IMG/VR virus record: IMGVR_UViG_3300021520_000002
Coordinates: 1 to 64,000 of that record
DNA: 64,000 nt
Strand: one strand, 5' to 3'
In this document: positions 42,587-58,448 of the stretch, in pieces
Position numbering within the stretch: the first letter of the stretch is position 1
Layout of the letters: each line of letters opens with the position of its first letter
Made by a program: the position numbers and the translations under genes
The notes under the pieces: model-generated
The model's input: the letters and a program-made list of their open reading frames with translations, nothing else
Databases searched by the model: none
What the model was told of the DNA's origin: nothing

Positions 42587-42880
42587 ATGATTTCAATAGT
42601 AATGTTTATGGAAGCAATGTCTGATACTTTAGCAAATGCTGGAGAAGAAATGTTAAGTGGATTTAAAAAGACAGCTCAAGGTGCTGCTAGAGCTACTGGA
42701 GTTGGAGTTGATTCTGCTGGACATGGAATGAGTAAAGTTGCTGGTTGGGTTCAAAGTGGTGGAAAAGAATTGCAGAAAGATCCATTAGGAACTCCAGGAA
42801 TGATTCTTGGTGGTGTTGCTGGTCTTAGTGCTGCAGCTCTTTTAGCAAGAAGAAATAAACAGAAACAATATAGTGAATAA
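42587..42880 (+). CDS. MIS-leader protein with Gly/Ala hydrophobic tail
   Basis: MISIVMFME; ILGGVAGLSAAALLARRNKQ. Confidence 0.6.
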   Translation: MISIVMFMEAMSDTLANAGEEMLSGFKKTAQGAARATGVGVDSAGHGMSKVAGWVQSGGKELQKDPLGTPGMILGGVAGLSAAALLARRNKQKQYSE

Positions 42881-42893
42881 TAGAGAGGTCAAT

Positions 42894-43322
42894 ATGATTT
42901 CTGTGATTAGTGAAGGTTGGTGGGCTGAAAAACAAAAAGAAAAAGCATTAAATCAAGAACAGTTTTCTCGTGATAATCTCAATAGTAAAATAAGAGAACG
43001 AGAAAAAGAAGAACAGTTTAAAATTTCAACTAAGAAAAAATTAGATGATAATTTAACAGATATGAGAGCTAAACTTAAAGCTGGAAAAATTGATCAGAAA
43101 GAATATAATGAATATGAAAAAGGTCATTTAAATACTAGATCTAAAGTTCTTGGAAATAAAGATCTTCCAGATGAACCTACTGTTAAACCATCTAGTGGAA
43201 AAATTATGGATTTAGTATCAGAACATCCATTAGCAGCAGCTGCAATTGGAGCTGTTGGTGTTGGTCTTGGTGCTCATGCTCTTCTTGGTGGTAGAAATAA
43301 ACAACAATCACCTAGTTATTAA
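42894..43322 (+). CDS. MIS-leader protein with Gly/Ala hydrophobic tail
   Basis: ATG at 42894 after GAGAGG; MISVISE; AAAAIGAVGVGLGAHALLGGRNKQ. Confidence 0.6.
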   Translation: MISVISEGWWAEKQKEKALNQEQFSRDNLNSKIREREKEEQFKISTKKKLDDNLTDMRAKLKAGKIDQKEYNEYEKGHLNTRSKVLGNKDLPDEPTVKPSSGKIMDLVSEHPLAAAAIGAVGVGLGAHALLGGRNKQQSPSY

Positions 43323-43347
43323 AAATAATATTTTTGGAGGTTTTTTT

Positions 43348-43911
43348 ATGAGTTTAGATATTAATAGAGTTATTATGGAGGCAACAAGTAGTCTTTTAGA
43401 GACTCAGAATACTGTTGATGATAAAGGGGATAAACCACAAGTTTCTGCTGATAAGAACAGTCTTCATGTTCCTGCTGATAAACCATCATCTACATCAACT
43501 ACTGCTCCTGTGAAACCAGTAACTGAAACAGAAGCTGAAACAGAAGCTGTGAAACCAGTGACTGAAACAGAAACAGCTCCTGTAAAAACAGAAACAGTTT
43601 CTGTAAAACCAGTAACTGAAAGTGCAGTTACAGATGTTATTAAAAAGATAAAGGATAAAATTACAACAGCTAAAGCAGAAGGTAGCAAAGAAGGTTATCA
43701 AGCTGGTCCTCAGAGTGCTGAACCTGCTCTTTCTAAAGTAGAGGGAGATGCTTATACACCGAGTGGAGCAGATGTTGAAACTGATTACATGTCTGCAATG
43801 AAAAAACTTAAGAATTATGGTTTACCAACTGCAGCAATCGCAGCTGGTCTTGGTGCAGTAGCTTTAGCAAAGAAACTTAGAAAAGCAAAGAAAGCAGCTA
43901 AAAAAGCGTAA
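43348..43911 (+). CDS. Low-complexity protein with VKPVTE repeats and AIAAGLGAVALAKKLRKAKK tail
   Basis: ATG at 43348 after GGAGG. Confidence 0.6.
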   Translation: MSLDINRVIMEATSSLLETQNTVDDKGDKPQVSADKNSLHVPADKPSSTSTTAPVKPVTETEAETEAVKPVTETETAPVKTETVSVKPVTESAVTDVIKKIKDKITTAKAEGSKEGYQAGPQSAEPALSKVEGDAYTPSGADVETDYMSAMKKLKNYGLPTAAIAAGLGAVALAKKLRKAKKAAKKA

Positions 43912-43941
43912 ATAAAAACAAAATTATGGAGGTAATATAAT

Positions 43942-44271
43942 ATGAATCTTACAAAAATTATCGATGAATCAGTACAGGCAGTTTTGACAGAAAAAAAAGA
44001 TGTTGGTGCATATGAACCAGGTCCTAATGTTGGTCCAGGAAAGTCTCCTTCAGAATATGTTCCTGCAGGTGGAGAACAGGAAAGTAACGCTACTAGGATA
44101 TTAAGAAAAGTAAAAGAAGGGGCTGAGGGAGTTGGTAAGAAAGTTGTTGGTGCAATTAAATCTGAACCAGTTGCAGCTTCAACTGCAGCTGCAATCGCAG
44201 CGGGTCTTGGCGCAGTAGCCTTAGCAAAGAAACTTAGAAAAGCAAAGAAATCTGCTAAAGCTAAAGCATAA
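43942..44271 (+). CDS. Protein with an identical AIAAGLGAVALAKKLRKAKK tail
   Basis: GGAGG RBS; 60-bp near-identical duplication of the previous gene's 3' end. Confidence 0.6.
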   Translation: MNLTKIIDESVQAVLTEKKDVGAYEPGPNVGPGKSPSEYVPAGGEQESNATRILRKVKEGAEGVGKKVVGAIKSEPVAASTAAAIAAGLGAVALAKKLRKAKKSAKAKA

Positions 44272-44292
44272 CTTTTAAATAGGAGTTGACTT

Positions 44293-44673
44293 ATGAAATT
44301 TAACGTCAACAAGATTATAACCGAAACAGTTTCTGAAAAAATAGTTAATGAATTTGAGATGGCTGATATTGGTGGAGCGGCTGTTAAAGGTTATAAGAAG
44401 GCTGAAGATGTTCTTGGTGGAGCTCTTTATAAAGCTTCTGGTTTAGAAAAGCATGATAAAGATGTTAATGAAATGCAAGATAAAGCAGGATCAATGCTTG
44501 TAAATGCTATAAAGAAAAAGAAATCAGCTTTAGCATCACTTCCACCGGAAGAACCATATACACCACCACCATCACTACCAACACCAGAAACAGATGATTA
44601 TGGACCAGCAGCAGGACTAGCTCTTGTTGGAGGTCTTGGGGCTTATGCTCTATCAAAAAAATCAAAAAAATAA
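44293..44673 (+). CDS. Protein with Gly/Ala hydrophobic segment and Lys tail
   Basis: AAGLALVGGLGAYALSKKSKK. Confidence 0.55.
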   Translation: MKFNVNKIITETVSEKIVNEFEMADIGGAAVKGYKKAEDVLGGALYKASGLEKHDKDVNEMQDKAGSMLVNAIKKKKSALASLPPEEPYTPPPSLPTPETDDYGPAAGLALVGGLGAYALSKKSKK

Positions 44674-44696
44674 AACAACAATCGGAGGATAATAAT

Positions 44697-45005
44697 ATGT
44701 TAGACAGAATTAATACCCTTATGGAAAGTGAAGATACACAGAAACTTTTGACTGAAAATGAGCAGTTACTTACTGAAGCAGTAGGTGATACTGTACAGTT
44801 TTCAAACACGTTGAAAGCATTCGTCATCAAACATCCTGAAGAATTTCTTGGTGAGAATACCGAAGAGACTTATAAGAATGTTAGATTATTTACTGAAGTA
44901 GCTACTTCACAGTTTCTTACTGAAGTGACTCATGTTTACGGTTCACAGATTCCAGAACCGATTCAGGAAACTCAGCAGCAGGAAGGTCTTGATCAATATC
45001 TGTAA
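44697..45005 (+). CDS. Acidic hypothetical protein, possible prohead core component
   Basis: GGAGG RBS; multiple L-x-E sites (LME, LTE). Confidence 0.45.
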   Translation: MLDRINTLMESEDTQKLLTENEQLLTEAVGDTVQFSNTLKAFVIKHPEEFLGENTEETYKNVRLFTEVATSQFLTEVTHVYGSQIPEPIQETQQQEGLDQYL

Positions 45006-45017
45006 AAAGAGGTTGTT

Positions 45018-45266
45018 ATGACAAACGATTCGATCAACGAAGCTATTGATCCAGTAACTGCAGTAATAGCTGCTGGTATAGCGGCTTATGCTGGTCATAA
45101 ACTTTATAAAAACTATAAACAAAAAAAGACTCTTGAAAAATTTGGTGTTAAAGAAGAACCAAAAAAAGATAGTACTTCAGATGATGAAGATTCTGCAAGA
45201 GATATAGCATACTATAATGCCGTTGATTTACCATCAAGTATAACTTATAATACACCAAAGAGGTAA
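45018..45266 (+). CDS. Small protein with Gly/Ala hydrophobic segment
   Basis: AVIAAGIAAYAGHKLYKNYKQKK. Confidence 0.5.
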   Translation: MTNDSINEAIDPVTAVIAAGIAAYAGHKLYKNYKQKKTLEKFGVKEEPKKDSTSDDEDSARDIAYYNAVDLPSSITYNTPKR

Positions 45267-45271
45267 ATATT

Positions 45272-45493
45272 ATGGTATCAGTGGTTGAATATTTGAATGA
45301 AGGTAGAATTTGGAATTCATTAAAATCTAGTTTTGCTAATCTTTTTGGTGGACCGGCAAAAATTAAGAAATCAGATTTATCTTCAAATGATAAAATTGAT
45401 AACTCAGAAGCATCATATCGTCGTTTAACACCAAAACCATTAGCATCAACTAGAAATAAGCTTGGTTATAAACCTAAGAAAACTACAGTTTAA
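45272..45493 (+). CDS. MIS-leader family small protein
   Basis: Starts MVSVVEYLNE. Confidence 0.55.
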   Translation: MVSVVEYLNEGRIWNSLKSSFANLFGGPAKIKKSDLSSNDKIDNSEASYRRLTPKPLASTRNKLGYKPKKTTV

Positions 45494-45505
45494 CATAAAA
45501 AAGAA

Positions 45506-45542
45506 TTATCGGCAAGACCTTTAAAATAGGTCTTGCCGATAA
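45506..45542. terminator. Bidirectional terminator-like hairpin of the TTGCCGAT family between convergent genes
   Basis: TTATCGGCAAGACCT, 7-nt loop, AGGTCTTGCCGATAA; perfect 15-bp stem. Confidence 0.75.
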
Positions 45543-45544
45543 AA

Positions 45545-46885
45545 TTAATTATTTATCATTATTTGTGAGATGTTTGTATAGCTTGGATCAAAAGTCATCA
45601 TCTTTCCACCTTTCACTATAATGAAAGTTAATGGAATATTATTTTTAATCCAGTTATATTTTGTATAGTTGTATTCAATATCTGAATGCATGTCTGTTAA
45701 ACTAATAACCATGCTTAAATCATCCTTATTCTTGTCCCAATATTCTTTTTCAACTAAGTCAAAAACACCTTTATGTGATGTTCCTCCACGACCTTTATAA
45801 CCTTCTTTTTTTAAGAAGTCATAAAAGGTATGAATATTTTCTAATGTGAATACTTTTTGTTGGTGGATAACTGAGTCATGTGTAATTAAATGTATTTCTT
45901 TGAAATGTCTCATACTATTTTCTGTTACACTTGAAAATTGTTTGAGATTTCGATCAGTGATAGATCCGGAAGTGTCAGTAAAAATTACTAATGTTCCTAC
46001 TCCTTCTACATCTTCTGTAAATGAATATCCTGGGAGTATTAGTCCATGAGGAATATAAATTTTATTTAATTGACGCCAACTTCTATCATCTGGTTTCATG
46101 ATGACATTTGTTTTAATTGATTTTTCAACTAAACGTTCCCAAGGTATTTCAACTTTTAGAAGTTCTTCTAAATATGTTGTTAAGTATCCTGGTAAGTCAC
46201 CTTTTGATTTAATTGTTTCAAAAACGGCTCTGGCTTCTGAAACTAATTGTTCAAGTTGATATGTGGCTTCTGGAGATTCAGTCATATCTTCTTTTTCAGA
46301 CTGACCTAGATCATCTGTCATTTCAAATAGTATATTATCATATTGATCTTTTACTATTATTGTATTCGGATCAGATCCAGAACCTATTATCATTTCAATA
46401 TGAATAAATTTTTCATTTTTCATTAACCAATCATATGCTTTTTCAACAGAACAATTTGGAAGAGCGTATTCTAATTTCTCAACAATATTGTATCTGTTTT
46501 GATATGGTTTTATAAGGTGTGATAAGTTTTTTCTTAGATATGTTTCAATAACATGATCTGCTGCAACACACCAAATTTCATGAATTCGATTATCTTTTCT
46601 TAGTCCATGTCTGTTTAAAATATGCATCAATTCATGACACAGAAGATAAACTAAATGAACAAATGAATAATCTGTTTTGCTCAAATAAAATTCATTTAAG
46701 TGAATCTTGCCGCTCTCAATGGATGATAAATCTTTTTCATTAAATCTTACAAATCCTTCTGCTGAAGGATGAAATTCATAAACCATCCAATCGAATTTAT
46801 GAAGCATCATTCCAAAAAAGATCAGTTCTTTTGTAAATAGTTTTATTTTGCTTAATCTAATTAAATCACCAATTCTGGGATTCAT
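45545..46885 (-). CDS. DUF2201-like metallopeptidase / vWA-domain protein
   Basis: HELMH (HExxH), W..AAD..I, DTSGS MIDAS, HDS, GRGGT, LTD. Confidence 0.8.
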   Translation of the reverse strand: MNPRIGDLIRLSKIKLFTKELIFFGMMLHKFDWMVYEFHPSAEGFVRFNEKDLSSIESGKIHLNEFYLSKTDYSFVHLVYLLCHELMHILNRHGLRKDNRIHEIWCVAADHVIETYLRKNLSHLIKPYQNRYNIVEKLEYALPNCSVEKAYDWLMKNEKFIHIEMIIGSGSDPNTIIVKDQYDNILFEMTDDLGQSEKEDMTESPEATYQLEQLVSEARAVFETIKSKGDLPGYLTTYLEELLKVEIPWERLVEKSIKTNVIMKPDDRSWRQLNKIYIPHGLILPGYSFTEDVEGVGTLVIFTDTSGSITDRNLKQFSSVTENSMRHFKEIHLITHDSVIHQQKVFTLENIHTFYDFLKKEGYKGRGGTSHKGVFDLVEKEYWDKNKDDLSMVISLTDMHSDIEYNYTKYNWIKNNIPLTFIIVKGGKMMTFDPSYTNISQIMINN

Positions 46886-46888
46886 TTT

Positions 46889-48130
46889 TTATACCTCGGA
46901 CATTGATTGACTAATTTCAATTACTGACTTTAAAACTTCTGAAGCTCTAGTTGGATCAATTTTTTGAATTTGTAAAATTATTTGATCGACAATATTCCTT
47001 TTCTTTAAAGTCTTTTCTAATTGTTTCATTTCTTTGAGCATCATAATAGAAAGCTCTGGAGCGTGTATCATAAATTGATCAATTAGATATGCTAAATTTT
47101 GTGTATATTTGGAACGATCAGATCTACCAATATAATTAGTTATTAATGCATAAGCTAAAGCATATCTTTTTACAGGGTCATCAGGAAGTTCATAACTTGA
47201 AGCACTCATTAAGATGCCATCAATATCGAATTCTGAATATACCTTGTAATAAATTACGAAATCACTTGCTCCTTCTTTTCCAACATATCCTGTTCCAAGA
47301 TATGAACAAATGTCTGAAGAAATTGTTTTTGTATACCATTCTTCACGTATTAAAATTTCTCTAGCGAATCTTGTCCATGATCTTGGAGAGCCCCAAGCTT
47401 GATCAACTTGTTCTTCTTCATGAAAATATTTTCTATATTGATTATGTCCAAGAAATGAAATAACGGCAGGATGGATTTTTACACCTTCTGTTAATGCATA
47501 ATTAGTTTTCCATCCATCAAAATCTGTATGGACTGGCATCATAACACATCTGTTTACGATAGCGCTAAATAAAGTTTTAGCACCTGATTTATTAGATGTA
47601 TTTCCAGCCATAACAATAGCAACATTCTGTGGAAGCTTATAGCTACGTAATGAACGTTCTGTTAAAAGTTCATACAAAAGAGCCATGTGGATTGGACTTA
47701 AAAGATGAGCATCGTCAAGCAACCAAATTACAAGTTTAGGTTTCTGTTCGATTATTTCTTTACCATCTTTATCTTTGGCTTTAACACTAATAGTTTCACT
47801 AGCTAATTCAAATAATGTTTTCATAATATCTGGAAAAGACCATATAGTTCCAATCATTGGTTTTCCATTAATTATGATGTTTTCAAATTGTGGAATACCT
47901 CCAGTTTCTTCTAATGGTTTAAGTGCCAAATGTGTTGATAAAATTCCAAAATTATATAAAGTACTTAAATAATGTAAACTGGCTGTTTTTCCACCACCAG
48001 GCGCACCACAAATAAAAGGTGTTCCTACATCGTAACCTTGAACTTGAAGATAACAATTTTCAATCACAAGATTAATAACTTCATGTAAAGCTTTTGATCC
48101 TTTTGTAAATTGTTCGTTGTCTGTAAGCAT
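46889..48130 (-). CDS. MoxR-like AAA+ ATPase
   Basis: Walker A GAPGGGKT, Walker B WLLDD, MAGN, NR, SPRSW; GGAGG RBS on the minus strand. Confidence 0.85.
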   Translation of the reverse strand: MLTDNEQFTKGSKALHEVINLVIENCYLQVQGYDVGTPFICGAPGGGKTASLHYLSTLYNFGILSTHLALKPLEETGGIPQFENIIINGKPMIGTIWSFPDIMKTLFELASETISVKAKDKDGKEIIEQKPKLVIWLLDDAHLLSPIHMALLYELLTERSLRSYKLPQNVAIVMAGNTSNKSGAKTLFSAIVNRCVMMPVHTDFDGWKTNYALTEGVKIHPAVISFLGHNQYRKYFHEEEQVDQAWGSPRSWTRFAREILIREEWYTKTISSDICSYLGTGYVGKEGASDFVIYYKVYSEFDIDGILMSASSYELPDDPVKRYALAYALITNYIGRSDRSKYTQNLAYLIDQFMIHAPELSIMMLKEMKQLEKTLKKRNIVDQIILQIQKIDPTRASEVLKSVIEISQSMSEV

Positions 48131-48221
48131 TATACCTCCTTAAAGTTTTGAAACAAAAATATTGTATCTTTATTATTTCTATATGAAAAATTTAAAAATT
48201 AAATTTAGAGGTAACTAATCT

Positions 48222-48431
48222 ATGAAGAATATTAATGAGATTAGATTTGGAGTTGTGTTAAGTAAAATACTTTCTGATGCAGATATGTATAATCCAGACA
48301 AATCGGTTACACCAAAGATGAATTCATATCTTGATAAACAAGCTGCTGCTGCTAAAGCACAAGTAGAAAAACTTATGGCAGTAAGAGAATCACAATCACA
48401 ACCAAAGCCAGGGATGCAAATGAGGTCTTAA
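48222..48431 (+). CDS. Small hypothetical protein (NE-x-RFG N-terminus)
   Basis: Starts MKNINEIRFGV. Confidence 0.5.
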   Translation: MKNINEIRFGVVLSKILSDADMYNPDKSVTPKMNSYLDKQAAAAKAQVEKLMAVRESQSQPKPGMQMRS

Positions 48432-48803
48432 ATGGCAGAACAACAAGTATTAGTAGATCAATATTATAAATTTCAACCATATGATGTTAAAAATGTTTTT
48501 ACAGAATTTGCAAAACCAATTTTTGATAATGCTTTTTTTAACAATTTAGCAACATTGAGAATTAATGCTGATTTTATTAATTTCAATACTGAAAGATGGC
48601 AACAACGACCAACTGTTTTTTGTTTAGATTTATATGAAGAACCACAGTTATATCCTGTGATTATGTTGATTAATAATGTTAAAAGTTTTTTAGAGTTTGT
48701 TCCCGAATATTTTTCTAGAGTTCGTGAGCCACCATATCAAAGTTATGTTATTATTGCTCCTTATCGTTCTGAGATTAAAAGAGTTTTGAATTTTGTTTCA
48801 TAG
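48432..48803 (+). CDS. Baseplate wedge protein, T4 gp53-like
   Basis: RPTVFCLDLYEEPQLYPVIMLINN resembles the gp53/LysM-like RP...LYG.P.LYW..L..N motif. Confidence 0.55.
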   Translation: MAEQQVLVDQYYKFQPYDVKNVFTEFAKPIFDNAFFNNLATLRINADFINFNTERWQQRPTVFCLDLYEEPQLYPVIMLINNVKSFLEFVPEYFSRVREPPYQSYVIIAPYRSEIKRVLNFVS

Positions 48804-48815
48804 GAGTTCCAATAT

Positions 48816-51067: not shown

Positions 51068-51127
51068 AAAAACATTAAAACTGTAAATAATAATCTTGAA
51101 ATAAGATTTTGAAATAAAGGAGAAGAA

Positions 51128-51331
51128 ATGATTTCAGTTTCTGATTTATTCGAAATATCTCCAATTAATATTGATAATTATAAAAATACAAATCGAGAAC
51201 CAGAAGCAAAAATAATAAATCATTTGATTAATATTAAAGGTAAAGATCCACAAGCATATAAAGCTGAAAGACCATATTTATTGAATCAGATAAAACAAAA
51301 TAAAGTTGCCGATAATAGGAGTTTATCATGA
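51128..51331 (+). CDS. MIS-leader family small protein
   Basis: Starts MISVSDLFE. Confidence 0.6.
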   Translation: MISVSDLFEISPINIDNYKNTNREPEAKIINHLINIKGKDPQAYKAERPYLLNQIKQNKVADNRSLS

Positions 51332-51678
51332 TTAGTGTTAGTCAAATATTTGAGTCTGAATTAGATGGACCTTTAGATGATTATTCATATCTTTTACATC
51401 ATGTTGAAGTAGATGATAAAGGTAATGAGAATTTACATCATTGTTTTGTATATGATCATTTGGGTAATATGTTTACTCAAGATACAATTATTATTAAAGA
51501 TGGAAAATGTTATGATGGAAATAATAAATTATTAAAAGATGGAACTTATCATTCAATTTCAGGTTTAGAACCAGAACAAGAAGTTTGTTGGAGTGATTCA
51601 CAAGCAGAAGAAAATGGAATTAAACCAAAACGTATGGTTGCAGGAATGACATATAAACAGAAAGCTAAGGAGTGGTAA
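51328..51678 (+). CDS. MIS-leader family protein, His-rich
   Basis: Starts MISVSQIFE; LLHH..., LHHC, HSI. Confidence 0.6.
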   Translation: MISVSQIFESELDGPLDDYSYLLHHVEVDDKGNENLHHCFVYDHLGNMFTQDTIIIKDGKCYDGNNKLLKDGTYHSISGLEPEQEVCWSDSQAEENGIKPKRMVAGMTYKQKAKEW

Positions 51679-52385
51679 TGATCATTAATCCTATTAATTG
51701 GAGAAGTATAGGAAAAGTTCCTACGATTGAACAAATAGAGGATTATATTTTTGAAGTTATTAATAATCTTGATTGTAGAAATTTAGCCTTATCTGGAGGA
51801 ATAGATAGTTCTTATATGTTATGGTGTATGGTGCAAAAATTTGGAAATGACATAAATTGTTTTACCATAGCTTTAAATCATAGTCATCCTGATTATATTT
51901 ATTCAAAACAGATAACAAAATTATTAGGAGTTAATTGGCATTGTTATATTCCTTCAGATAAAGAAGTTAAAGAATTACTTGAAGATAAAAATGGAGATTT
52001 AATAGTTGCAAAATTTTTTACTTGGTTAGAAGCTAAAGAAAGAATAACTGAAATAATTTGTTGTGATGGTATTGATGAATTTATGGGTGGTTATTATGAT
52101 CATCTTCATAATCCTACACATGAAACCTATTATGATTATATGATTAGATTACAAAAAGAACAATTTGAACCTCTTCATAAAAATTCTGGTAAAATAGATG
52201 TGTTGTTACCATATATGAATAGAAATCTTATTGAATTATATAATAGAATTCCTATGATTGATAGATTTGATGCTGTTGGTGGTAGAAAAAAGATAATGGT
52301 TGAATTAGCAAAAGATAAAATTCCAGAAGAAATAATTAATCGAAGAAAATATGGATTTATTGACGCTATGAAAATAAAGGAGTAA
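51678..52385 (+). CDS. Stand-alone asparagine-synthetase-like ATP-pyrophosphatase domain (no glutaminase)
   Basis: LALSGGIDSS PP-loop, DGIDEFMGGY, LPYM, K......IPEEIINRRKYGF; ATG at 51678 after AAGGAG. Confidence 0.8.
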   Translation: MIINPINWRSIGKVPTIEQIEDYIFEVINNLDCRNLALSGGIDSSYMLWCMVQKFGNDINCFTIALNHSHPDYIYSKQITKLLGVNWHCYIPSDKEVKELLEDKNGDLIVAKFFTWLEAKERITEIICCDGIDEFMGGYYDHLHNPTHETYYDYMIRLQKEQFEPLHKNSGKIDVLLPYMNRNLIELYNRIPMIDRFDAVGGRKKIMVELAKDKIPEEIINRRKYGFIDAMKIKE

Positions 52386-52388
52386 ATT

Positions 52389-52826
52389 ATGATTAGTGTA
52401 AATTATTTATTTGAAGGTGATGAACCTAAAGGGGTTATAACAGATGAAAATATTTTAAAGGATGTAAAAAAGACACAAGAAATTCAAGATGCTGTTATAA
52501 GACTTATTATAGACAAAAAACTAAGACCGGATGATGATGACATTCATAATCTTGCCGGTAAATTTAATATGGACCCACATGAGTTTGAAGAAGTTATTTA
52601 TGCTTTACTTGGTGATTTAATTACTAAAAGTGCTGGAAAACATAAGGATATTCCAATATCAAAATTTGATCCAAAACAAGTTAAGATAGGGATGAAAATA
52701 GAAAAAGAACATTCAGACAATCCAGCGATAAGAGCAGAAATAACTAAAGATCATTTAGCTGAATTTCCAAAAGATTATTATACAAGATTAGTTAAATTGG
52801 AAAAAGATGCTAAGAAAAATAAATAA
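52389..52826 (+). CDS. MIS-leader protein with DUF5661-like C-terminal domain
   Basis: MISVNYLFE; FDPKQVKIGMKIEKEH...ITKDHLAEFPKDYYTRL. Confidence 0.6.
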   Translation: MISVNYLFEGDEPKGVITDENILKDVKKTQEIQDAVIRLIIDKKLRPDDDDIHNLAGKFNMDPHEFEEVIYALLGDLITKSAGKHKDIPISKFDPKQVKIGMKIEKEHSDNPAIRAEITKDHLAEFPKDYYTRLVKLEKDAKKNK

Positions 52827-52836
52827 GGAGAACATT

Positions 52837-53244
52837 ATGCCAAAAGATAATGAAGCGTGGTATAAAAAACTTTCTGGTATATTAGGAATAGTAGTAGTTG
52901 TTATTGGTTTAATAACAACATTATTTGCTATTGATAGTAGATATGCAAAATGTCAAGATTTACAACAACAAAAAATTGATACTTCTAAAACTCTTCAACA
53001 AATCAGAATTGATATGAGACAAGATAGATATCTTGATAGATATGATAGATTAAAATCTAGAAAGAAAGATCTTGAATATCAAGTTAAGAGATATCCAAAT
53101 GATAGAGATTTAAAAAATGATCTCGAAGAAACAAAAGAAGAATTAGCTATAGCTAGACAACAAATAAATGAAATGGAAAAAATTCAAACTCGTCAACAAG
53201 GTAAGTTTGATGCTCCGTTAGCACCTGCACCGGCAAAAAAATAA
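52837..53244 (+). CDS. Single-TM coiled-coil protein
   Basis: ATG at 52837 after AAGGAG; GILGIVVVVIGLITTLFAI. Confidence 0.55.
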   Translation: MPKDNEAWYKKLSGILGIVVVVIGLITTLFAIDSRYAKCQDLQQQKIDTSKTLQQIRIDMRQDRYLDRYDRLKSRKKDLEYQVKRYPNDRDLKNDLEETKEELAIARQQINEMEKIQTRQQGKFDAPLAPAPAKK

Positions 53245-53259
53245 ATTTGGAGATTAATT

Positions 53260-53454
53260 ATGATTAGCGTTATAGCTGAAATATACAACAATCAAAAATT
53301 TCAACCAAATACAGTTGAAATTCCTAATCAGAATCAGCCACTTCCCCCAACAAATCTTTCTAGAGAAATACCAGTTCCACAACCACAAAATAAAAGAGTT
53401 ACAACTGTGACTAATCCTATTTTTAAAAATTCACCAGTTCCAGTTGGAGGATGA
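53260..53454 (+). CDS. MIS-leader family small protein
   Basis: Starts MISVIAE. Confidence 0.55.
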   Translation: MISVIAEIYNNQKFQPNTVEIPNQNQPLPPTNLSREIPVPQPQNKRVTTVTNPIFKNSPVPVGG

Positions 53455-53455
53455 G

Positions 53456-53761
53456 ATGATAAGTATATGTGAATTTCAAGATGAAGTTCTCGCTAAATAT
53501 GAAGCCCAAAGAAAAGAGTTATATAATAGAGTACATCCAGATGAAGCTCATAGTGGTTTAGATAAGGCTAGTAAAGCATTAGAAAGTAAACCAGAAGTTA
53601 GAAATTATAGAGCTGTAGAACTACCAGTTAATAAAGAACCTTTTGATAAAAAAATATTAAAAAAAGTTGGTCAAGGTATAGATAATGCAGATGGTGGAGT
53701 AAGAAAAATATTTACTTCATTCAATCAAGCTGGTCAAAATATATATTCTGCAACTCATTAA
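53456..53761 (+). CDS. MIS-leader family protein
   Basis: ATG at 53456 after GGAGG; starts MISICE. Confidence 0.55.
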   Translation: MISICEFQDEVLAKYEAQRKELYNRVHPDEAHSGLDKASKALESKPEVRNYRAVELPVNKEPFDKKILKKVGQGIDNADGGVRKIFTSFNQAGQNIYSATH

Positions 53762-53773
53762 TGAGAGGTAATT

Positions 53774-53965
53774 ATGATAAGTATGGTGGCTGAACAGATT
53801 ACAGATGAAGAGATAAATGAATTTATGGGTAATCTTGGTAAATCTTTAAAGAAAAATAAAGAAGAAAATCAATCTGAAGGTGAAAAACTAAAAGATAAAA
53901 TAGATCAAGAAAAACCATTTAAAAATTTTCCTTGGCAAGATAAAAATAAACAAACACAGGTGTAA
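53774..53965 (+). CDS. MIS-leader family small protein
   Basis: Starts MISMVAE. Confidence 0.55.
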   Translation: MISMVAEQITDEEINEFMGNLGKSLKKNKEENQSEGEKLKDKIDQEKPFKNFPWQDKNKQTQV

Positions 53966-53967
53966 TT

Positions 53968-54294
53968 ATGATATCAATTTCTAGTTTATTTGAGGGAGAA
54001 AATATTATAGAAAAAGTTGTTGATGAAAAAAAATTTAGAAAAAAATTTGATCAAGGTTCTTTAAGATATAATATGATGTTGGGTTCATTAATAGCACCAG
54101 CTTCATTAGCGGCAAAAACTGCATTTGTTGATAAAGATATTTTAAATAAATTAAATCAGGATCATACATTGGCTGCTCCTGCTGCGTTAGCTGCAGCATC
54201 AGCTCTTGGTGCTGGAAGTGCAGCCGCTATACATGGGGTTGTTAAAAGTTATTTTAAAGTAAGAGATAAAATTAAAAGGAGAAAGAAACAATGA
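53968..54294 (+). CDS. MIS-leader protein with Ala/Gly hydrophobic segment and basic tail
   Basis: MISISSLFE; AALAAASALGAGSAAAIHGVV...KRRKKQ. Confidence 0.6.
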   Translation: MISISSLFEGENIIEKVVDEKKFRKKFDQGSLRYNMMLGSLIAPASLAAKTAFVDKDILNKLNQDHTLAAPAALAAASALGAGSAAAIHGVVKSYFKVRDKIKRRKKQ

Positions 54295-54497
54295 TATCAA
54301 TTCTTTCCGATATTAATCAATTTGCTGGACTTATGAGAACTGATCCAAGATTACTAATACAAATAGCTGCTAAAAAAGCAGCATCAAAAGGAACAACATC
54401 AGATGAAATTAATCAACATGTTGATAACACTGCTAAAGAAGGTACAGGAAAAGTTACTAAAAAGACTATAAAAAATATTATAGATGCAGGAAGGTAA
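54291..54497 (+). CDS. MIS-leader family small protein
   Basis: Starts MISILSD. Confidence 0.55.
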   Translation: MISILSDINQFAGLMRTDPRLLIQIAAKKAASKGTTSDEINQHVDNTAKEGTGKVTKKTIKNIIDAGR

Positions 54498-54499
54498 TT

Positions 54500-55333
54500 A
54501 TGATATCTATTATGGAAATTTTTGATAGACCATCACCGGATACTAGATCATTTGCTCAAAAAGCTTTTGGTGCTAAAGCTCCTGAAAGAACCCCAAATCT
54601 TGCCGATAAATTAAAATCTTCATATCAAGACAAGATTAAAGAGACTAAAGATTTTCGTAGAGATATTATAAATAAGAATGTAGAAAATTTAAAATTAAAA
54701 ACATCCAATTGGATTAAGCCTAAGGATGAAAACAACACATCTAAATTTAGTAAATTTAGAACTGGTGTGTCTAATTTAATAAGACCTGAAAATGCTGAGA
54801 ATATTAAACCAAGAAATCTTGTTGATGATGCGCGTGATATGATTGGTTCTAGAAGGGTTGAAAAAGGTTTTGAACAAAAAATTGGTAGATTAAATCAATT
54901 ACAAAAGAATCAACAAGCTAAAAGAAATCTTAGTGATTTAACTAATGCTTCTGATAAATATAGAGAACAACATCCTATTAGAACGGCAATTTTCGGTGGT
55001 ACTCCACAAGAACGAACTGGATTTTTAGGAGTTAAAGGAATATCTGATTTAGAAAAAGCTCAAATAAGAGCAGATAATGTGAAATCAACTTCACCATTAA
55101 AAAATCAAAGTGGTGCTTATAAAAGTGCCGATAGATTTTTAGATACTGTTGAAAATAGGAATAGAAAAGGAATAGGTGTTGCACAACCAGCTTTAAATAC
55201 AACTAATCCAATTCCACAACCAGCTGCAACTAATCCAACAACTATAACTCAACCAATACAAAATGTTATTAATGGTCAAGCTGTAGCAAAAAGAAAAAAG
55301 AGATTAAATGATATGGGTGTATCAACTGCTTAA
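54500..55333 (+). CDS. MIS-leader basic protein
   Basis: Starts MISIME. Confidence 0.6.
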   Translation: MISIMEIFDRPSPDTRSFAQKAFGAKAPERTPNLADKLKSSYQDKIKETKDFRRDIINKNVENLKLKTSNWIKPKDENNTSKFSKFRTGVSNLIRPENAENIKPRNLVDDARDMIGSRRVEKGFEQKIGRLNQLQKNQQAKRNLSDLTNASDKYREQHPIRTAIFGGTPQERTGFLGVKGISDLEKAQIRADNVKSTSPLKNQSGAYKSADRFLDTVENRNRKGIGVAQPALNTTNPIPQPAATNPTTITQPIQNVINGQAVAKRKKRLNDMGVSTA

Positions 55334-55359
55334 AATTTTATTTACGAGAGGATATAATT

Positions 55360-55737
55360 ATGTCGACCATGAAAGAAAAATTAAAATCATTTAAAGATTC
55401 CATATCTAGAAATAAAGGTAATATAGAAAAGGTAGCGGCAGGTTCAGCTGGAGCAGCTGGGGTTGTTGGTGGATTGGGAACAGCAAAAGGAGCACAAATA
55501 TATCATGATGCATATGATGAAACTTTTAAAAGTTATAAAGAAAGTCCACAATATAAAATTTTAAAAAATATAGATCCTATAGGTACAGCAAAAATGGAAG
55601 GTAATATTACATTTGAAAAGGGAATGGTAAAAGGAGTTAGAGATCTTGGTCTTGCAGGAGCTGGTATTGGTGGAGCAGTTTTAGCTGGAGTTATAGCTAA
55701 ACACTATCATGATAAGAAAAAGAAGAAATCCAAATAA
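55360..55737 (+). CDS. Glycine-zipper-like membrane protein with Lys tail
   Basis: AAGSAGAAGVVGGLG; LGLAGAGIGGAVLAGVIAKHYHDKKKKKSK. Confidence 0.55.
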   Translation: MSTMKEKLKSFKDSISRNKGNIEKVAAGSAGAAGVVGGLGTAKGAQIYHDAYDETFKSYKESPQYKILKNIDPIGTAKMEGNITFEKGMVKGVRDLGLAGAGIGGAVLAGVIAKHYHDKKKKKSK

Positions 55738-55745
55738 GGTGAAAA

Positions 55746-56825
55746 ATGAAACTCATAGATCAAGAGTGGCTTGGTGTTATATTAGAAGATGATGATAATA
55801 AACACCAAGGTCGTTATAAAGTTCATATACCACAACTTCAACCTCATATGAGCAAGGATACCGGTATATGGGCTAAAAACCATGTTACTAATTATAGAAT
55901 ATCTCCATCTGAAGATGGGGTGTATGGAAGTTATTTTCCTTTACATCCAAATACACAAGTAATTGTTAAATTTTTTACCAATCAGTTTGAATCTGCTTAT
56001 ATTGATAGAATCACATCAGATCATAATCCTGAATCTATGCCGTATGAAATTATTGATAGGGATGATTATTATCAAATTATAAGAACTCCAAAAAATAATC
56101 ATTTAATTGCCTTATGTGAAGAAACGGAAACCGGTGGAGCTGCCGATACTCCTAACTCAATACATATCTATTATAATGATAAAACAATAACTATTGTTAT
56201 GGATAGTACTGGTTTAAATATTAATGTCGCGAAAGTGGAACCTGAAGAAGGTGAAGAAGAAGATGATGAGAGTGGTAATATTAATTTAAAAACTGAAGCT
56301 AGTACATTTATTCAAGTTGATGAAGATTTACATATAAAAGTAACTGGGACTGTTTACATTCAATCTGAAACTGATATTAATATTTTAGCGTCAGAAAATA
56401 TTAATGTTGAATCTGAAAATGCTAATATTAATATTTTAGCGTCAGAAAATATTAATATTCAATCAGATTCAGATTTAAACATTAAAGCTTCAGGAAATGT
56501 TAATATTCAGTCAGAGTCAGATATGAATATTAATTCTGGAGGTCTTTGTAATATTGAAGCAGAATCAGATGTTAATATTTTAGCTACTGGTAATTGTAAT
56601 ATAGAATCTACTTCAACAACTAGTATTAGAGCTGCTGGACTTTGTAATATTGATGGTGCTATGGTTAATTTAAATTGTGGTGGAGCTCAAAGTGCTGAGG
56701 GTGCTGATGAAGCTGAAGATGCAGAACCAGCTGAACCAGCAGAAGATTATACAGAACCAAATTTAATAGATACAGATAGTGAGTTTGAATATTATGAAGG
56801 AAGTGATGGGACAGTTATTATTTAA
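55746..56825 (+). CDS. Baseplate central spike / hub (T4 gp5- or gpV/VgrG-like)
   Basis: N-terminal OB-like D...GRYKVHIP...WA...G.YFP...V.V.F; 8-residue beta-helix repeats (INILASEN, VNIQSESD); ends GAMVNLN. Confidence 0.75.
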   Translation: MKLIDQEWLGVILEDDDNKHQGRYKVHIPQLQPHMSKDTGIWAKNHVTNYRISPSEDGVYGSYFPLHPNTQVIVKFFTNQFESAYIDRITSDHNPESMPYEIIDRDDYYQIIRTPKNNHLIALCEETETGGAADTPNSIHIYYNDKTITIVMDSTGLNINVAKVEPEEGEEEDDESGNINLKTEASTFIQVDEDLHIKVTGTVYIQSETDINILASENINVESENANINILASENINIQSDSDLNIKASGNVNIQSESDMNINSGGLCNIEAESDVNILATGNCNIESTSTTSIRAAGLCNIDGAMVNLNCGGAQSAEGADEAEDAEPAEPAEDYTEPNLIDTDSEFEYYEGSDGTVII

Positions 56826-56837
56826 GGAGTTATATTT

Positions 56838-57251
56838 ATGATATCGATTATAGCTGAAGTTAGTAAAAGTTTTAATATGAGAGATAAATTATATAAAGCT
56901 AGTAATGAATATAAAGATGCTGCTAAAAATTCTTCAATTTTTGCTCCGTTTAAAAAAGCACAATTATATGCAGCATCAGTAAGAGCTGATAAATTAGGAA
57001 AACTTATCAATTCAAAAATAAATGATGAACATTTAGTTTATGATAAAAGTGATATAAATTTGGCGAAAGTATTTCAACATCCAAAACGGGAATTAATTGA
57101 TAGAATTAATAATCAACCAGAAGTTAAAGAAATGATAAATAGAGCTGAAGGTGGTAAATCAAAAGTTCCTGAAAATTTAAAAAATTTATCATCAGCTTTA
57201 AAACAAACTGGAATGGGTATAAGAAATAAAATTTTTAAATCTTTTAAATAA
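56838..57251 (+). CDS. MIS-leader family protein
   Basis: Starts MISIIAE. Confidence 0.6.
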   Translation: MISIIAEVSKSFNMRDKLYKASNEYKDAAKNSSIFAPFKKAQLYAASVRADKLGKLINSKINDEHLVYDKSDINLAKVFQHPKRELIDRINNQPEVKEMINRAEGGKSKVPENLKNLSSALKQTGMGIRNKIFKSFK

Positions 57252-57269
57252 TTTTTTAGCGAGTTAAAT

Positions 57270-57776
57270 ATGATATCAATAACAGAAGTTCAGAAAGGGT
57301 ATTCCGGATATAAAATGGAACATGTGGGATCTGGTGTTGGAAAAATAATTGGAGGAACAGTTCCTGGTCCAGCAGCTGTAATAACAATTCCACTTGGTCA
57401 TTATATAGGAAAAAATGTTCCTAAAGATCCAGAGAAAGATATTGATGAATCTAAGAGAACTCATAGAGTTGCAGCTATTGCTGATGAAAGACTTAGAGCC
57501 AAAAGAATGTTAAAACATGCAGCTGTAGGCGCATCTATTGGTGCTGCTGTAGGGGCAACAATAGGAAAGAAAAAAGGAGCAGTTATTGGTGGAGGAGTAG
57601 GATCAGTTCTTGGATTAATTTCTGCTGGTGCAGTAGGTGGTTGGAGAGGTGCTGAAAAGCTTGGTTATGGACCAATTGGTAAAACTTCTGCCGCTCTTCC
57701 TTTTCCAGGAGAATATACTGGATTGTTAGCTCCTTCAGGAATAAAAATAGATGCTGTTCCGGAGGAAAAGAAATAA
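57270..57776 (+). CDS. MIS-leader glycine-zipper protein
   Basis: MISITE; AAVGASIGAAVGATIGKKKGAVIGGGVGSVLGLISAGAVGG. Confidence 0.6.
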   Translation: MISITEVQKGYSGYKMEHVGSGVGKIIGGTVPGPAAVITIPLGHYIGKNVPKDPEKDIDESKRTHRVAAIADERLRAKRMLKHAAVGASIGAAVGATIGKKKGAVIGGGVGSVLGLISAGAVGGWRGAEKLGYGPIGKTSAALPFPGEYTGLLAPSGIKIDAVPEEKK

Positions 57777-58447: not shown

Positions 58448-58448
58448 A

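What the first reader, a model, noticed from the sequence alone, without database searches (positions are those of the whole stretch)
42587..57776. Family of proteins ending in a Gly/Ala hydrophobic helix plus a Lys/Arg tail, interleaved with the leader family
SEEN in 42587, 42894, 43348, 43942, 44293, 45018, 53968, 55360 and 57270. Genes 43348 and 43942 share an identical 20-aa tail (DNA 43834-43893 versus 44191-44250, differing only at synonymous sites). Genes 42587 and 42894 both end ALL..RNKQ. INFERENCE: moderately hydrophobic glycine-zipper helices suit proteins that stay soluble in the capsid and insert into the host membrane after ejection, as a DNA conduit, a superinfection block or an early compartment. 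The basic tails could bind DNA.
Basis: inference. Interest (0 to 1): 0.62.

Follow-up and report, generated by a model that had tools for sequence, protein, structure and literature searches.

The report
Gly/Ala-helix, basic-tail small phage proteins
An uncultured 285-kb jumbo phage and its relatives carry a conserved, unnamed family of small proteins: a short cleavable-looking leader, a fast-evolving disordered middle, and a weakly hydrophobic Gly/Ala helix running into a Lys/Arg tail, most likely proteins carried in the virion and inserted into the host membrane at infection.

Summary
A genome-wide scan of the 285,572-bp phage found Gly/Ala-rich uncharged helices with Lys/Arg flanks only in the nine named genes, all within 42.6-57.8 kb.

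Profile searches show homology for the tandem genes 42894, 43348, 43942 and 44293, and for 42587 through its orthologues. Genes 45018, 53968, 55360 and 57270 are look-alikes by composition only.

The core family is new and unnamed, with 155 clusters among 1.84 billion proteins. Its plan is a leader M-x-D-[IV]-N-K-I-I-x-E-S, a variable disordered middle, and one continuous helix (AF2 pLDDT 96) of ...AAGLGALAL + RKKLKK.

It always lies in the same block: neck/terminator-like FN3 protein, then the array, then an acidic ~100-aa protein, then a VWA/ATPase pair.

The helices are about as hydrophobic as E. coli's tail anchor ElaB and this phage's own tape-measure segments. They are far less hydrophobic than the phage's ordinary membrane proteins.

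The phage has a phiKZ-type S80 head protease that cuts after Glu. The leaders fit it, with Glu at P1 and Ser at P1'.

Best reading (about 0.4): virion-carried pilot or ejection proteins that insert N-out/C-in into the host membrane. No tool could test virion association or membrane insertion.

The parts
42587..42880 (+). 97-aa member. Leader MISIVMFME; Gly/Ala helix at residues 66-87 (nt 42782-42847); tail RRNKQKQYSE (net +3).
   Evidence: The profile E-value is only 0.47, but its orthologues in L015 and L016 score 7e-6 and 8e-4.
42894..43322 (+). 142-aa member. Leader MISVISE; coiled, Lys/Glu-rich middle; EHP cap plus helix at residues 111-133 (nt 43224-43292); tail RNKQQSPSY.
   Evidence: Profile E=3e-8. 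Weak Pfam DUF883_C match, E=0.03, 14.4 bits against a cut-off of 27.
43348..43911 (+). 187-aa core member. Leader MSLDINRVIME; acidic middle carrying degenerate repeats; helix at residues 157-174 (nt 43816-43869); tail KKLRKAKKAAKKA (net +8).
   Evidence: E=2e-15; tandem repeats at 43511-43616.
43942..44271 (+). 109-aa core member. Leader MNLTKIIDES; helix at residues 76-95 (nt 44167-44226); tail KKLRKAKKSAKAKA (net +8).
   Evidence: (E=3e-20). The AF2 model has helix 3-16, a low-confidence middle and one continuous helix 76-108 at pLDDT about 96.
44293..44673 (+). 126-aa core member. Leader MKFNVNKIITET; Pro-rich linker; helix at residues 103-121 (nt 44599-44655); tail KKSKK.
   Evidence: E=2e-12.
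44697..45005 (+). Conserved acidic 102-aa protein (leader-like MLDRINTLMES, ends ...QYL). It follows the array in every relative examined. Its function is unknown.
   Evidence: 14 invariant columns over 8 lineages; 83% identity to L006. Complex prediction with 43942 gave no verdict.
45018..45266 (+). 82-aa look-alike. The Gly/Ala helix is at the N-terminus (residues 12-27, nt 45051-45098), followed by the basic stretch KLYKNYKQKK.
   Evidence: Profile E=0.2. Positional orthologues are present in L006, L015, L016, L017 and L019.
53968..54294 (+). 108-aa look-alike. Leader MISISSLFE; helix at residues 66-92 (nt 54163-54243); tail KSYFKVRDKIKRRKKQ (net +8).
   Evidence: Orthologue at L006 13395-13688, 60% identity. 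Not significant against the core profile.
55360..55737 (+). 125-aa look-alike just upstream of the central spike gene. Two Gly/Ala segments, at residues 25-42 and 96-113 (nt 55645-55698); tail KHYHDKKKKKSK.
   Evidence: No hit to the core profile.
57270..57776 (+). 168-aa Gly-rich protein. Leader MISITE; internal Gly segments at residues 83-99 and 103-125; no basic C-terminal tail.
   Evidence: Pfam Gly-zipper_YMGG at E=3.7e-5, 23.8 bits, below the cut-off of 28.9.
40946..42574 (+). Context: conserved 542-aa virion-type protein with a C-terminal FN3 domain. It lies directly upstream of the array and was used as the synteny anchor.
   Evidence: Pfam fn3 and Pur_ac_phosph_N. 70 homologues. AF2 pLDDT 80. 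Foldseek matches: PBS1 protein at E=8e-12, phiKZ neck chain 9xps_w at 1e-6, and rows named tail sheath completion or stabilizer.
45545..48130 (-). Context: DUF2201 (metallopeptidase-like plus VWA) protein and an ATPase, on the opposite strand and always adjacent to the array.
55746..56825 (+). Context: gp5-like central spike with beta-helix repeats.
   Evidence: PHROG baseplate hub subunit, E=6e-14.

Best explanation
These are small proteins carried in the virion and delivered at infection, built from three modules.

1. A 6-12-residue N-terminal leader ending in Glu. This is MIS[IV]..LFE, or M-x-D-[IV]-N-K-I-I-x-E followed by Ser in the core family. It targets the protein into the assembling particle and is removed by the phage's S80 head maturation protease.
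2. A fast-evolving, mostly disordered middle.
3. One continuous C-terminal helix. Its first ~20 residues are a marginally hydrophobic Gly/Ala-rich segment, capped by [DE]-[HN]-P. Its last 5-15 residues are Lys/Arg-rich.

Proposed mechanism: the weak hydrophobicity lets the proteins stay soluble beside the DNA or in the neck and tail channel. After ejection the helix enters the host cytoplasmic membrane. The membrane potential (inside negative) draws the basic extension to the cytoplasmic face, giving an N-out/C-in orientation. There the extension can hold anionic lipid or the leading DNA end. Small-residue faces let helices pack together, and possibly against the Gly-rich segments of the tape-measure protein, to open or stabilise the entry site.

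Shown here: the architecture, its conservation, the synteny, the hydrophobicity class, the protease gene and the motif fit.

Inferred: packaging, cleavage, ejection, insertion, topology and oligomerisation.
For: - **Restricted to one place.** The feature occurs only in nine genes inside one 15-kb stretch of a 285-kb genome.
- **A real family.** The core family has 155 clusters at E<=1e-3, 33 of them at <=1e-10, among 1.84e9 proteins. 148 of 150 representatives keep a Gly/Ala helix with a basic tail, mostly 5-19 residues from the C-terminus.
- **Constant context.** The same gene block is found in seven further lineages of 33-38% GC.
- **Conserved ends, variable middle.** Flanking genes are 76-85% identical between the window and L006. 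The array genes are 20-42% identical, with middles at 15-35%, yet the leaders and tails of 43348 and 43942 are 69-86% identical.
- **Structure.** AF2 gives a single helix 76-108 at pLDDT 96 and a disordered middle.
- **Hydrophobicity class.** It equals that of the verified tail anchor ElaB and of eight Gly-rich segments in this phage's tape-measure-like protein. It is clearly below the phage's ordinary Ile/Leu/Phe-rich membrane segments.
- **Composition is selected.** GC-rich Gly and Ala codons are kept in a 29% GC genome.
- **Protease.** The S80 head protease gene lies just upstream of the capsid gene. SPN3US S80 cuts after Glu and prefers Ser at P1' (PMC10052503). The family logo has Glu 70% and Ser 86% at those positions, with Ile/Leu at P3 and P4.
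- **Leader distribution.** [LIVMF]xE occurs in residues 2-12 in 9 of 9 members, 47% of genes in the + strand block at 1-108 kb, and 20% elsewhere.
- **Peptide-level selection.** The leader Ser uses both AGY and TCN codons.
- **Protein delivery is likely.** Split RNA polymerase genes of the phiKZ/AR9 kind suggest, by analogy, that proteins are injected; a virion polymerase was not shown here.
- **Precedent.** T7 gp16 is soluble, has membrane helices that insert after ejection, and needs a basic C-terminus for infectivity (PMC8954989). The small ejected proteins gp6.7 and gp7.3 touch the DNA end (PMC11784390).
Against: - No proteomic, structural or expression data exist for this phage or any relative. 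No cultured relative carries the block.
- The neighbourhood is not purely structural. It also holds PAS, glycosyltransferase, Asn-synthase-like and VWA/ATPase genes.
- By the Hessa scale most helices score positive (+0.8 to +8.8), so unassisted insertion is uncertain.
- The core helix is conserved at nearly every position, including K-K-L-R. That also suits a specific protein-docking peptide.
- P1 is Glu in only 70% of family leaders, and P3 is Ile rather than the Ala reported for SPN3US.
- In some relatives the basic stretch precedes the helix, or the helix is N-terminal or mid-protein. One fixed topology therefore does not hold for all.
Confidence: 0.4

Rival explanations
1. They are ordinary membrane-anchored proteins made in the infected cell and never packaged. 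The C-terminal or N-terminal Gly/Ala anchor sits in the host inner membrane. Possible roles are tethering or organising particle assembly at the membrane, blocking superinfection, or changing membrane physiology.
For: - The architecture resembles the E. coli tail anchor ElaB: [E/H]-x-P, a Gly/Ala-rich helix, then terminal basic residues, with similar hydrophobicity.
- There is a weak DUF883_C match for 42894.
- Relatives place the helix at the N-terminus or put the basic residues before it, as expected for generic single-pass anchors obeying the positive-inside rule.
- SPN3US work links protease action to release of proheads from the inner membrane (PMC10052503).
Against: - A tail of up to +8 after a C-terminal anchor would have to cross the membrane against the potential, or the 75-190-residue N-terminal part would have to be exported without a signal peptide.
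- This phage's other small membrane proteins use Ile/Leu/Phe-rich helices.
- The conserved Glu-Ser leader is unexplained.
- hhalign against ElaB gives a probability of only 4.5%.
Confidence: 0.25
2. They are internal head or neck-channel proteins with no membrane role. The basic tails neutralise and hold packaged DNA. The Ala/Gly-rich helices bundle with one another into an inner-body-like scaffold that leaves with the DNA.
For: - The block also encodes very Lys-rich low-complexity proteins in distant relatives, plus a conserved, strongly acidic partner-like protein.
- Leaders fit a head protease.
- phiKZ-group phages pack tens of MDa of internal protein (PMC10052503).
- The T7 gp7.3 basic region contacts the DNA end (PMC11784390).
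- The helix is conserved all round, as for a buried packing helix.
Against: - A run of 18-23 residues with no charged or amide side chain, kept in nearly all 150 representatives and matching the tape-measure segments, is not needed for DNA binding.
- T4-type internal proteins lack such helices (from general knowledge, not tested here).
Confidence: 0.2
3. The conserved ...AAGLGALAL-RKKL... end is a docking or cargo-loading peptide. It binds one site on a particle protein (capsid interior, portal, or neck/terminator), as encapsulin cargo peptides and scaffolding C-termini do, and so delivers variable cargo.
For: - The core family shows high position-by-position conservation of both the small and the basic residues.
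- The middles are variable, like exchangeable cargo.
- The array is always adjacent to the neck/terminator-like 542-aa gene.
Against: - The look-alikes (42587, 53968, 55360, 45018) keep the composition but not the motif.
- The motif can sit at either end or mid-protein.
- An N-terminal targeting leader already exists.
- No partner was tested successfully. The only complex job was with the acidic protein and gave no verdict.
Confidence: 0.08

Closest known systems
T7/P22-type ejection (pilot) proteins: gp14, gp16 and the small gp6.7 and gp7.3
   Same: They are stored soluble in the particle and leave through the tail. T7 gp16 has membrane helices that insert only after ejection, and a basic C-terminus required for infectivity. 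The small basic proteins touch the DNA end (PMC8954989; PMC11784390).
   Different: - No sequence relation was found; PHROGs and Pfam give no hits.
- Here the particle is a contractile-tailed jumbo phage.
- The proteins are much smaller, single-helix, in tandem arrays, and carry an N-terminal cleavable-looking leader.
T4 internal proteins with a capsid targeting sequence, and S80-processed head and ejection proteins of phiKZ and SPN3US
   Same: - A short N-terminal leader ends in Glu, with aliphatic P3/P4 and Ser at P1'.
- An S80 protease gene is present.
- The bodies are small, polymorphic and partly basic.
   Different: - There is no homology to known internal proteins.
- The leaders are shorter than most SPN3US propeptides.
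- P3 is Ile or Leu, not Ala.
- No known internal protein family ends in a Gly/Ala helix plus a polybasic tail.
ElaB/YqjD/YgaM (DUF883) C-tail-anchored inner-membrane proteins of E. coli
   Same: A hydrophilic N-terminal part, then [E/H]-x-P, then a ~20-residue Gly/Ala-rich helix of the same hydrophobicity class, then terminal basic residues.
   Different: - Not homologous: hhalign probability 4.5%, and the Pfam DUF883_C match is below its cut-off.
- ElaB ends in two Arg; these proteins end in 4-8 Lys/Arg over 5-16 residues.
- ElaB has no leader.
Hydrophobic Gly-rich segments of tape-measure proteins
   Same: This phage's 1643-aa tape-measure-like protein has eight Gly-rich uncharged segments of the same hydrophobicity class. 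It is a particle protein expected to leave first through the tail.
   Different: Those segments are internal to a giant protein, richer in Gly, Ile, Leu and Met, and lack the polybasic extension.
Inovirus major coat protein (fd/M13 g8p, Pf1, Pf3); comparison from general knowledge, not tested here
   Same: A small protein with an acidic N-terminal part, one hydrophobic helix with small residues, and a basic C-terminus. It spans the membrane N-out/C-in and contacts DNA.
   Different: - It comes from an unrelated virus type.
- Its helix is more hydrophobic.
- It has a Sec- or YidC-type signal or a very short N-terminal part.
- No comparison was run.

Membership tests
DUF883 / ElaB-YqjD-YgaM tail-anchored proteins (Pfam PF05957, PF19029) | Match to the DUF883_C glycine-zipper model at or above its gathering score | tested here: not met
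   Only 42894 matches, at E=0.03 and 14.4 bits against a cut-off of 27. The other eight have no match.
DUF883 / ElaB-YqjD-YgaM tail-anchored proteins (Pfam PF05957, PF19029) | Profile-level homology to E. coli ElaB | tested here: not met
   hhalign of alignment A7 against ElaB: probability 4.5%, 24 aligned columns.
DUF883 / ElaB-YqjD-YgaM tail-anchored proteins (Pfam PF05957, PF19029) | Architecture: hydrophilic N-terminal part, Pro-capped Gly/Ala-rich helix at the extreme C-terminus, terminal basic residues | tested here: met
   Met in 42587, 42894, 43348, 43942, 44293, 53968 and 55360, and in 148 of 150 family representatives. This shows a functional likeness only.
Capsid-targeted, protease-processed internal or ejection proteins (T4 CTS type; phiKZ/SPN3US S80 type) | The genome encodes the matching head maturation protease | tested here: met
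   G000 94957-95721: Pfam Peptidase_S80 at 26.8 bits (cut-off 23.4); PHROG head maturation protease at E=3e-15. It lies directly upstream of the capsid gene. T4 S77 and Gp23 models give no match.
Capsid-targeted, protease-processed internal or ejection proteins (T4 CTS type; phiKZ/SPN3US S80 type) | N-terminal propeptide ending in Glu, with the reported subsite preferences | tested here: inconclusive
   All nine have [LIVMF]xE in residues 2-12. The family logo shows P1 Glu 70% (Asp 12%), P1' Ser 86% and P3/P4 Ile/Leu. SPN3US reports A-X-E with Val at P4 and Ser at P1'. P1 and P1' fit; P3 differs.
Capsid-targeted, protease-processed internal or ejection proteins (T4 CTS type; phiKZ/SPN3US S80 type) | Presence in purified virions with processed N-termini, and ejection into the host | not testable with these tools
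   The phage is uncultured. There is no match in 50,697 phage records.
Transmembrane glycine zipper (Pfam Gly-zipper families PF13441, PF13436, PF13488) | Motif (G,A,S)xxxGxxx(G,S,T) within the helix (Ala also allowed at the last position in the scan) | tested here: inconclusive
   Present in 42587, 53968, 55360 and 57270. Absent from 42894, 43348, 43942, 44293 and 45018, which have AxxxA/AxxxG ladders.
Transmembrane glycine zipper (Pfam Gly-zipper families PF13441, PF13436, PF13488) | Match to a Pfam Gly-zipper model above its cut-off | tested here: not met
   Only 57270 matches: YMGG at 23.8 bits against 28.9, and OmpA-type at 19.5 against 27.
Transmembrane glycine zipper (Pfam Gly-zipper families PF13441, PF13436, PF13488) | Helix hydrophobic enough to span a bilayer | tested here: inconclusive
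   KD19 is 1.1-1.9 and the Hessa 19-residue sum is +1.6 to +8.7 for the nine genes. The verified anchor ElaB scores 1.85 and +2.41, while classical phage membrane helices score 2.35 and -1.23.
Holins, spanins or other lysis membrane proteins | Strongly hydrophobic helix or helices, and a position in a lysis cassette beside an endolysin | tested here: not met
   There is no PHROG lysis hit. The neighbours are neck-like, spike and VWA/ATPase genes. Hydrophobicity is below the phage's own membrane proteins.
Encapsulin-type C-terminal cargo-loading peptide | Specific binding of the C-terminal peptide to the inner face of an HK97-fold shell protein | not tested
The resemblance is recalled from memory only.

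The most novel reading that the evidence does not exclude
A large clade of uncultured phiKZ/AR9-like jumbo phages carries a dedicated, rapidly diversifying set of single-helix "pilot" proteins. Each is loaded into the particle by a cleavable N-terminal leader. After ejection, each is drawn by the membrane potential into the host inner membrane by its polybasic end. There they work with the Gly-rich tape-measure segments to build the DNA entry site, or to seed the membrane of an early infection vesicle. This would be the first defined membrane-insertion module of the jumbo-phage infection apparatus.
Probability: 0.15. Interest if true: 0.8.

Novelty: new variant of a known kind. Interest (0 to 1): 0.52.

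Why it matters
How contractile-tailed jumbo phages get DNA, and their injected proteins, across the inner membrane is not known. Nor is it known where the membrane of the early infection vesicle comes from. No virion membrane-insertion element has been defined for them.

This family gives a concrete, conserved and easily mutated candidate: one helix plus a basic tail, with a recognisable leader.

It also supplies a sequence signature (leader, Gly/Ala helix, basic tail) that can pick out likely packaged proteins in uncultured jumbo phage genomes.

If the proteins turn out to be plain tail anchors or DNA-condensing proteins, the finding is still a new, widespread, unannotated phage protein family. 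It shows an unusual pattern of conserved ends around a hypervariable middle, and evidence of gene conversion between tandem copies.

Tried and rejected
- **Pfam and PHROGs on the nine proteins.** No family above its cut-off.
- **Word-based homologue search with 43942.** Only one relative found.
- **Pattern scan of IMG/VR for the tail motif.** Only the same second contig.
- **IMG/VR scans with the 393-aa and 542-aa neighbours.** Same single contig.
- **Phage GenBank collection.** No DNA match, and no protein match for the 542-aa protein or the capsid protein.
- **ESM Atlas look-alikes for 42894 and 43942.** Scores of 0.80-0.81, unnamed clusters and low-confidence models, so no lead.
- **T4-type protease and capsid models.** Absent.
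- **Homology to ElaB.** Rejected: hhalign probability 4.5%.
- **One-sided helix.** A helical-moment test of conservation and of side-chain volume did not differ from shuffles: 3328 and 2035 of 5000 shuffles reached the observed value. An in-plane amphipathic anchor is therefore not favoured.
- **Complex prediction of 43942 with the conserved acidic neighbour 44697.** No verdict (score 0.27, mark 0.32). This is no evidence either way.
- **Homo-oligomer and capsid-docking models.** Not run, because only one job was allowed.
- **VIA second look at the 542-aa model.** Dominated by the FN3 domain, so the N-terminal 450 residues were not resolved.
- **Sequencing-run look-up.** No reads were laid.
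- **A script holding a typed ElaB sequence.** It was rerun from the stored protein P0221.
- **Near-identical tails of 43348 and 43942 explained by purifying selection alone.** Rejected. 43942 is closer in DNA to its paralogue (4 of 54 nt) than to its own orthologue (12 of 54), which points to gene conversion.

Full report
**What the window is**

The window is the first 64 kb of a single 285,572-bp virus record. It has 29.4% GC and CheckV rates it about 95% complete. Elsewhere on the record are:
- a large terminase;
- a 1643-aa tape-measure-like protein with a transglycosylase domain;
- a capsid protein;
- a contractile sheath whose nearest cultured relatives are AR9, PBS1 and phiR1-37 at about 24% identity;
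- a head maturation protease of Pfam family S80 directly upstream of the capsid gene;
- several split RNA polymerase beta and beta' genes.

It is therefore a deep relative of the phiKZ/AR9 group of jumbo myoviruses. Models for the T4 S77 protease and the T4 capsid protein gp23 find nothing. No GenBank phage record matches the region, the 542-aa neighbour or the capsid protein.

**Checking the observation**

All nine ORFs are present at the stated starts.
- Seven end in a stretch of 18-27 residues with no Asp, Glu, Lys, Arg, Gln or Asn. This stretch is 45-67% Gly+Ala and is followed by 5-16 residues with a net charge of +2 to +8.
- Two depart from the description. In 45018 the helix is N-terminal. 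In 57270 the Gly-rich segments are internal and there is no basic end.

The feature is not chance.
- In a scan of 460 called ORFs of the whole genome, this kind of helix with a K/R flank occurs only in these nine genes.
- The nine occupy 29 consecutive gene positions. None of 200,000 random draws was as compact.
- The proteome is 10.6% Gly+Ala and the genome 29% GC. The helix-coding DNA is 47-59% GC, so the composition is held against the mutational bias.

**One family or several?**

A profile of 123 homologues gives clear scores to 43942 (3e-20), 43348 (2e-15), 44293 (2e-12) and 42894 (3e-8). It also scores the orthologues of 42587 in two relatives. It does not score 45018, 53968, 55360 or 57270 significantly. 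So the five tandem genes at 42587-44673 form a real family, and the other four are look-alikes by composition.

The near-identity of the 43348 and 43942 tails reflects gene conversion in this genome. They differ at 4 of 54 nt. By contrast, 43942 differs from its own orthologue at 12 of 54, and the two paralogues of the relative differ at 14 of 54.

**Relatives and context**

The 542-aa protein upstream of the array has about 70 homologues. I fetched contigs for seven lineages with 33-38% GC. All show the same order:
1. the 542-aa protein;
2. an array of small genes with Gly/Ala helices and basic flanks;
3. a conserved, very acidic ~100-aa protein ending in ...YL;
4. a small protein with an N-terminal Gly/Ala helix;
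5. a small basic protein;
6. a DUF2201 (VWA) protein and an ATPase on the other strand.

The 542-aa protein folds confidently (pLDDT 80). It resembles uncharacterised proteins of PBS1 and phiKZ-group phages, a chain of the phiKZ neck structure, and rows named tail sheath completion or stabiliser. This is a lead to a neck or terminator role, not a proof, because the FN3 domain dominates the second look. The gp5-like spike lies just after 55360.

**The core family at large**

A profile of eight members found 155 clusters at 50% identity with E<=1e-3 among 1.84 billion proteins. All those looked up are unnamed. Of 150 representatives, 148 keep the Gly/Ala helix and basic tail, mostly 5-19 residues from the end.
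- **Tail logo:** ...A-A-A-[AL]-[ALI]-A-A-G-[LG]-G-A-L-A-L | R-K-[KR]-L-K-K-x-K-K. The highest information lies at small residues spaced four apart and at the first two basic residues.
- **Cap:** [DE]-[HN]-P usually precedes the helix.
- **Leader logo:** M-x-D-[IV]-N-K-I-I-x-E-S-[IL], with Glu 70% and Ser 86%.
- **Middle:** 25-288 residues, near neutral and rich in charged residues.
- **Rate of change:** between the window and its closest relative the flanking genes are 76-85% identical. The array genes are only 20-42% identical, with middles at 15-35% but leaders and tails at 69-86%.
- **Repeats:** the middle of 43348 contains degenerate tandem repeats.
- **Structure:** AF2 with the deep alignment gives a short N-terminal helix, a low-confidence middle, and one continuous helix 76-108 at pLDDT about 96. 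That helix runs through both the Gly/Ala part and the basic part.

**Physical character of the helix**

| Set | KD 19-residue mean | Hessa 19-residue sum |
|---|---|---|
| Family (148 representatives) | 1.60 (median) | +3.25 (median) |
| E. coli ElaB, annotated tail-anchored inner-membrane protein | 1.85 | +2.41 |
| Seven measured Gly-rich segments (19 residues or longer) of the phage's tape-measure-like protein | 1.17-1.80 | +1.9 to +5.7 |
| 21 ordinary small membrane proteins outside the structural block (Ile/Leu/Phe-rich) | 2.35 (median) | -1.23 (median) |

The genome thus uses two classes of hydrophobic segment, and the finding belongs with the tape-measure protein, a virion protein. There is no significant helical moment of conservation or side-chain volume, so an in-plane amphipathic anchor is not favoured. 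The strict glycine-zipper motif holds for four look-alikes but not for the core members.

**The leaders**

About 34 small ORFs, nearly all in the + strand block at 1-108 kb, begin MIS[IV]..LFE or a close variant.
- The Ser is encoded by both AGY and TCN codons, so selection acts on the peptide.
- [LIVMF]-x-E within residues 2-12 occurs in 47% of genes in that block and 20% elsewhere. It occurs in all nine genes of the finding.
- The capsid protein itself begins MYEQAIFE.
- In SPN3US the S80 protease cuts after Glu in A-X-E, prefers Ser at P1', and removes N-terminal propeptides, some of only 20-24 residues (PMC10052503).
- P1 and P1' fit here; P3 is Ile or Leu instead of Ala.

This agrees with a T4-like capsid targeting and cleavage logic, but cleavage was not shown.

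**Interpretation**

I favour virion-carried pilot or ejection proteins whose helix enters the host inner membrane after ejection, with the basic end on the cytoplasmic side (confidence 0.4). The reasons are:
- the match in hydrophobicity class to the tape-measure segments rather than to the phage's own membrane proteins;
- the leaders and the protease;
- the virion-gene context;
- the pattern of conserved ends and a hypervariable middle;
- the positive-inside argument, since a +8 tail after a C-terminal anchor is hard to export from inside but easy to draw in from outside;
- the T7 gp16, gp6.7 and gp7.3 precedents.

The rivals are:
- plain tail-anchored proteins made in the cell (0.25);
- inner-body or DNA-holding proteins with no membrane role (0.2);
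- a docking or cargo-loading peptide (0.08).

The variable placement of the helix and its basic flank in distant relatives fits generic membrane helices better than a fixed docking peptide. The near-invariant core motif argues the other way.

**Limits**

- Host, expression timing, virion content, cleavage, membrane insertion, topology, oligomeric state and DNA binding are all untested.
- The one complex prediction (43942 with the acidic neighbour) returned no verdict.

Noticed in passing
window 16794-19981, 40160-40929, 51128-54497, 56838-59061; also G000 66632, 87942, 97430, 98803, 185009(-), 189251(-): About 34 small ORFs begin with MIS[IV]..LFE or close variants. The Ser is encoded by both AGY and TCN codons, so the leader is selected as a peptide. 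The capsid protein begins MYEQAIFE.
   Followed up: partly
window 7806-10565: A 919-aa phage protein built from at least six PAS domains (Pfam PAS_9, E=8e-55), with no recognised output domain.
   Followed up: no
window 14148-15839, 21461-25276 and 29125-39513: Two large glycosyltransferase and methyltransferase fusion proteins lie just upstream of five paralogous fibre-like genes. Those genes share an N-terminus (MNVPPYG...) and carry long GTSGSS collagen-like repeats. This suggests fibre glycosylation.
   Followed up: no
G000 79316-84247 (outside the window): A 1643-aa tape-measure-like protein with eight Gly-rich uncharged segments (residues 791-1164) and a C-terminal transglycosylase-like region.
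   Followed up: partly
window 45545-48130 (- strand): A DUF2201 (metallopeptidase-like plus VWA) protein and an ATPase sit inside the + strand block. They are next to the array in every relative. Their nearest cultured matches are N4-like phages, at about 25% identity.
   Followed up: partly
window 44697-45005: A strongly acidic 102-aa protein (ends ...QYL), 83% identical to its L006 orthologue and with 14 invariant columns across eight lineages. It always follows the array. A possible partner or chaperone, but complex prediction gave no verdict.
   Followed up: partly
L016 14191-15210: Two family members are fused in one 339-aa ORF. The first basic tail runs directly into a MISIIE leader, and the ORF ends in a second Gly/Ala helix and tail.
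   Followed up: no
L018 12182-12829 and L020 11130-11839: In distant relatives the ...GITAGLGA..AKKLRR motif sits at the N-terminus of 48-70-aa proteins. The DVNKII leader sits on a separate acidic protein with no helix, so the modules are shuffled.
   Followed up: partly
L018 1420-8148, L019 8511-9044, L020 1428-7292: Relatives carry Tad6, SUKH, PilZ, SNase, and response-regulator or PAS genes with HD-type (HD_5/HD) domains just upstream of the block. These are possible anti-defence and signalling cargo.
   Followed up: no
window 51672-52385 and 52389-52826: An asparagine-synthase-like protein (Pfam E=2e-17) and a DUF5661 protein that carries the MIS leader lie among the small leader genes.
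   Followed up: no
window 43511-43616: Degenerate 12- and 21-nt tandem repeats encode VKPVTETE-like units in the middle of 43348. These units are absent from the orthologue in L006.
   Followed up: partly
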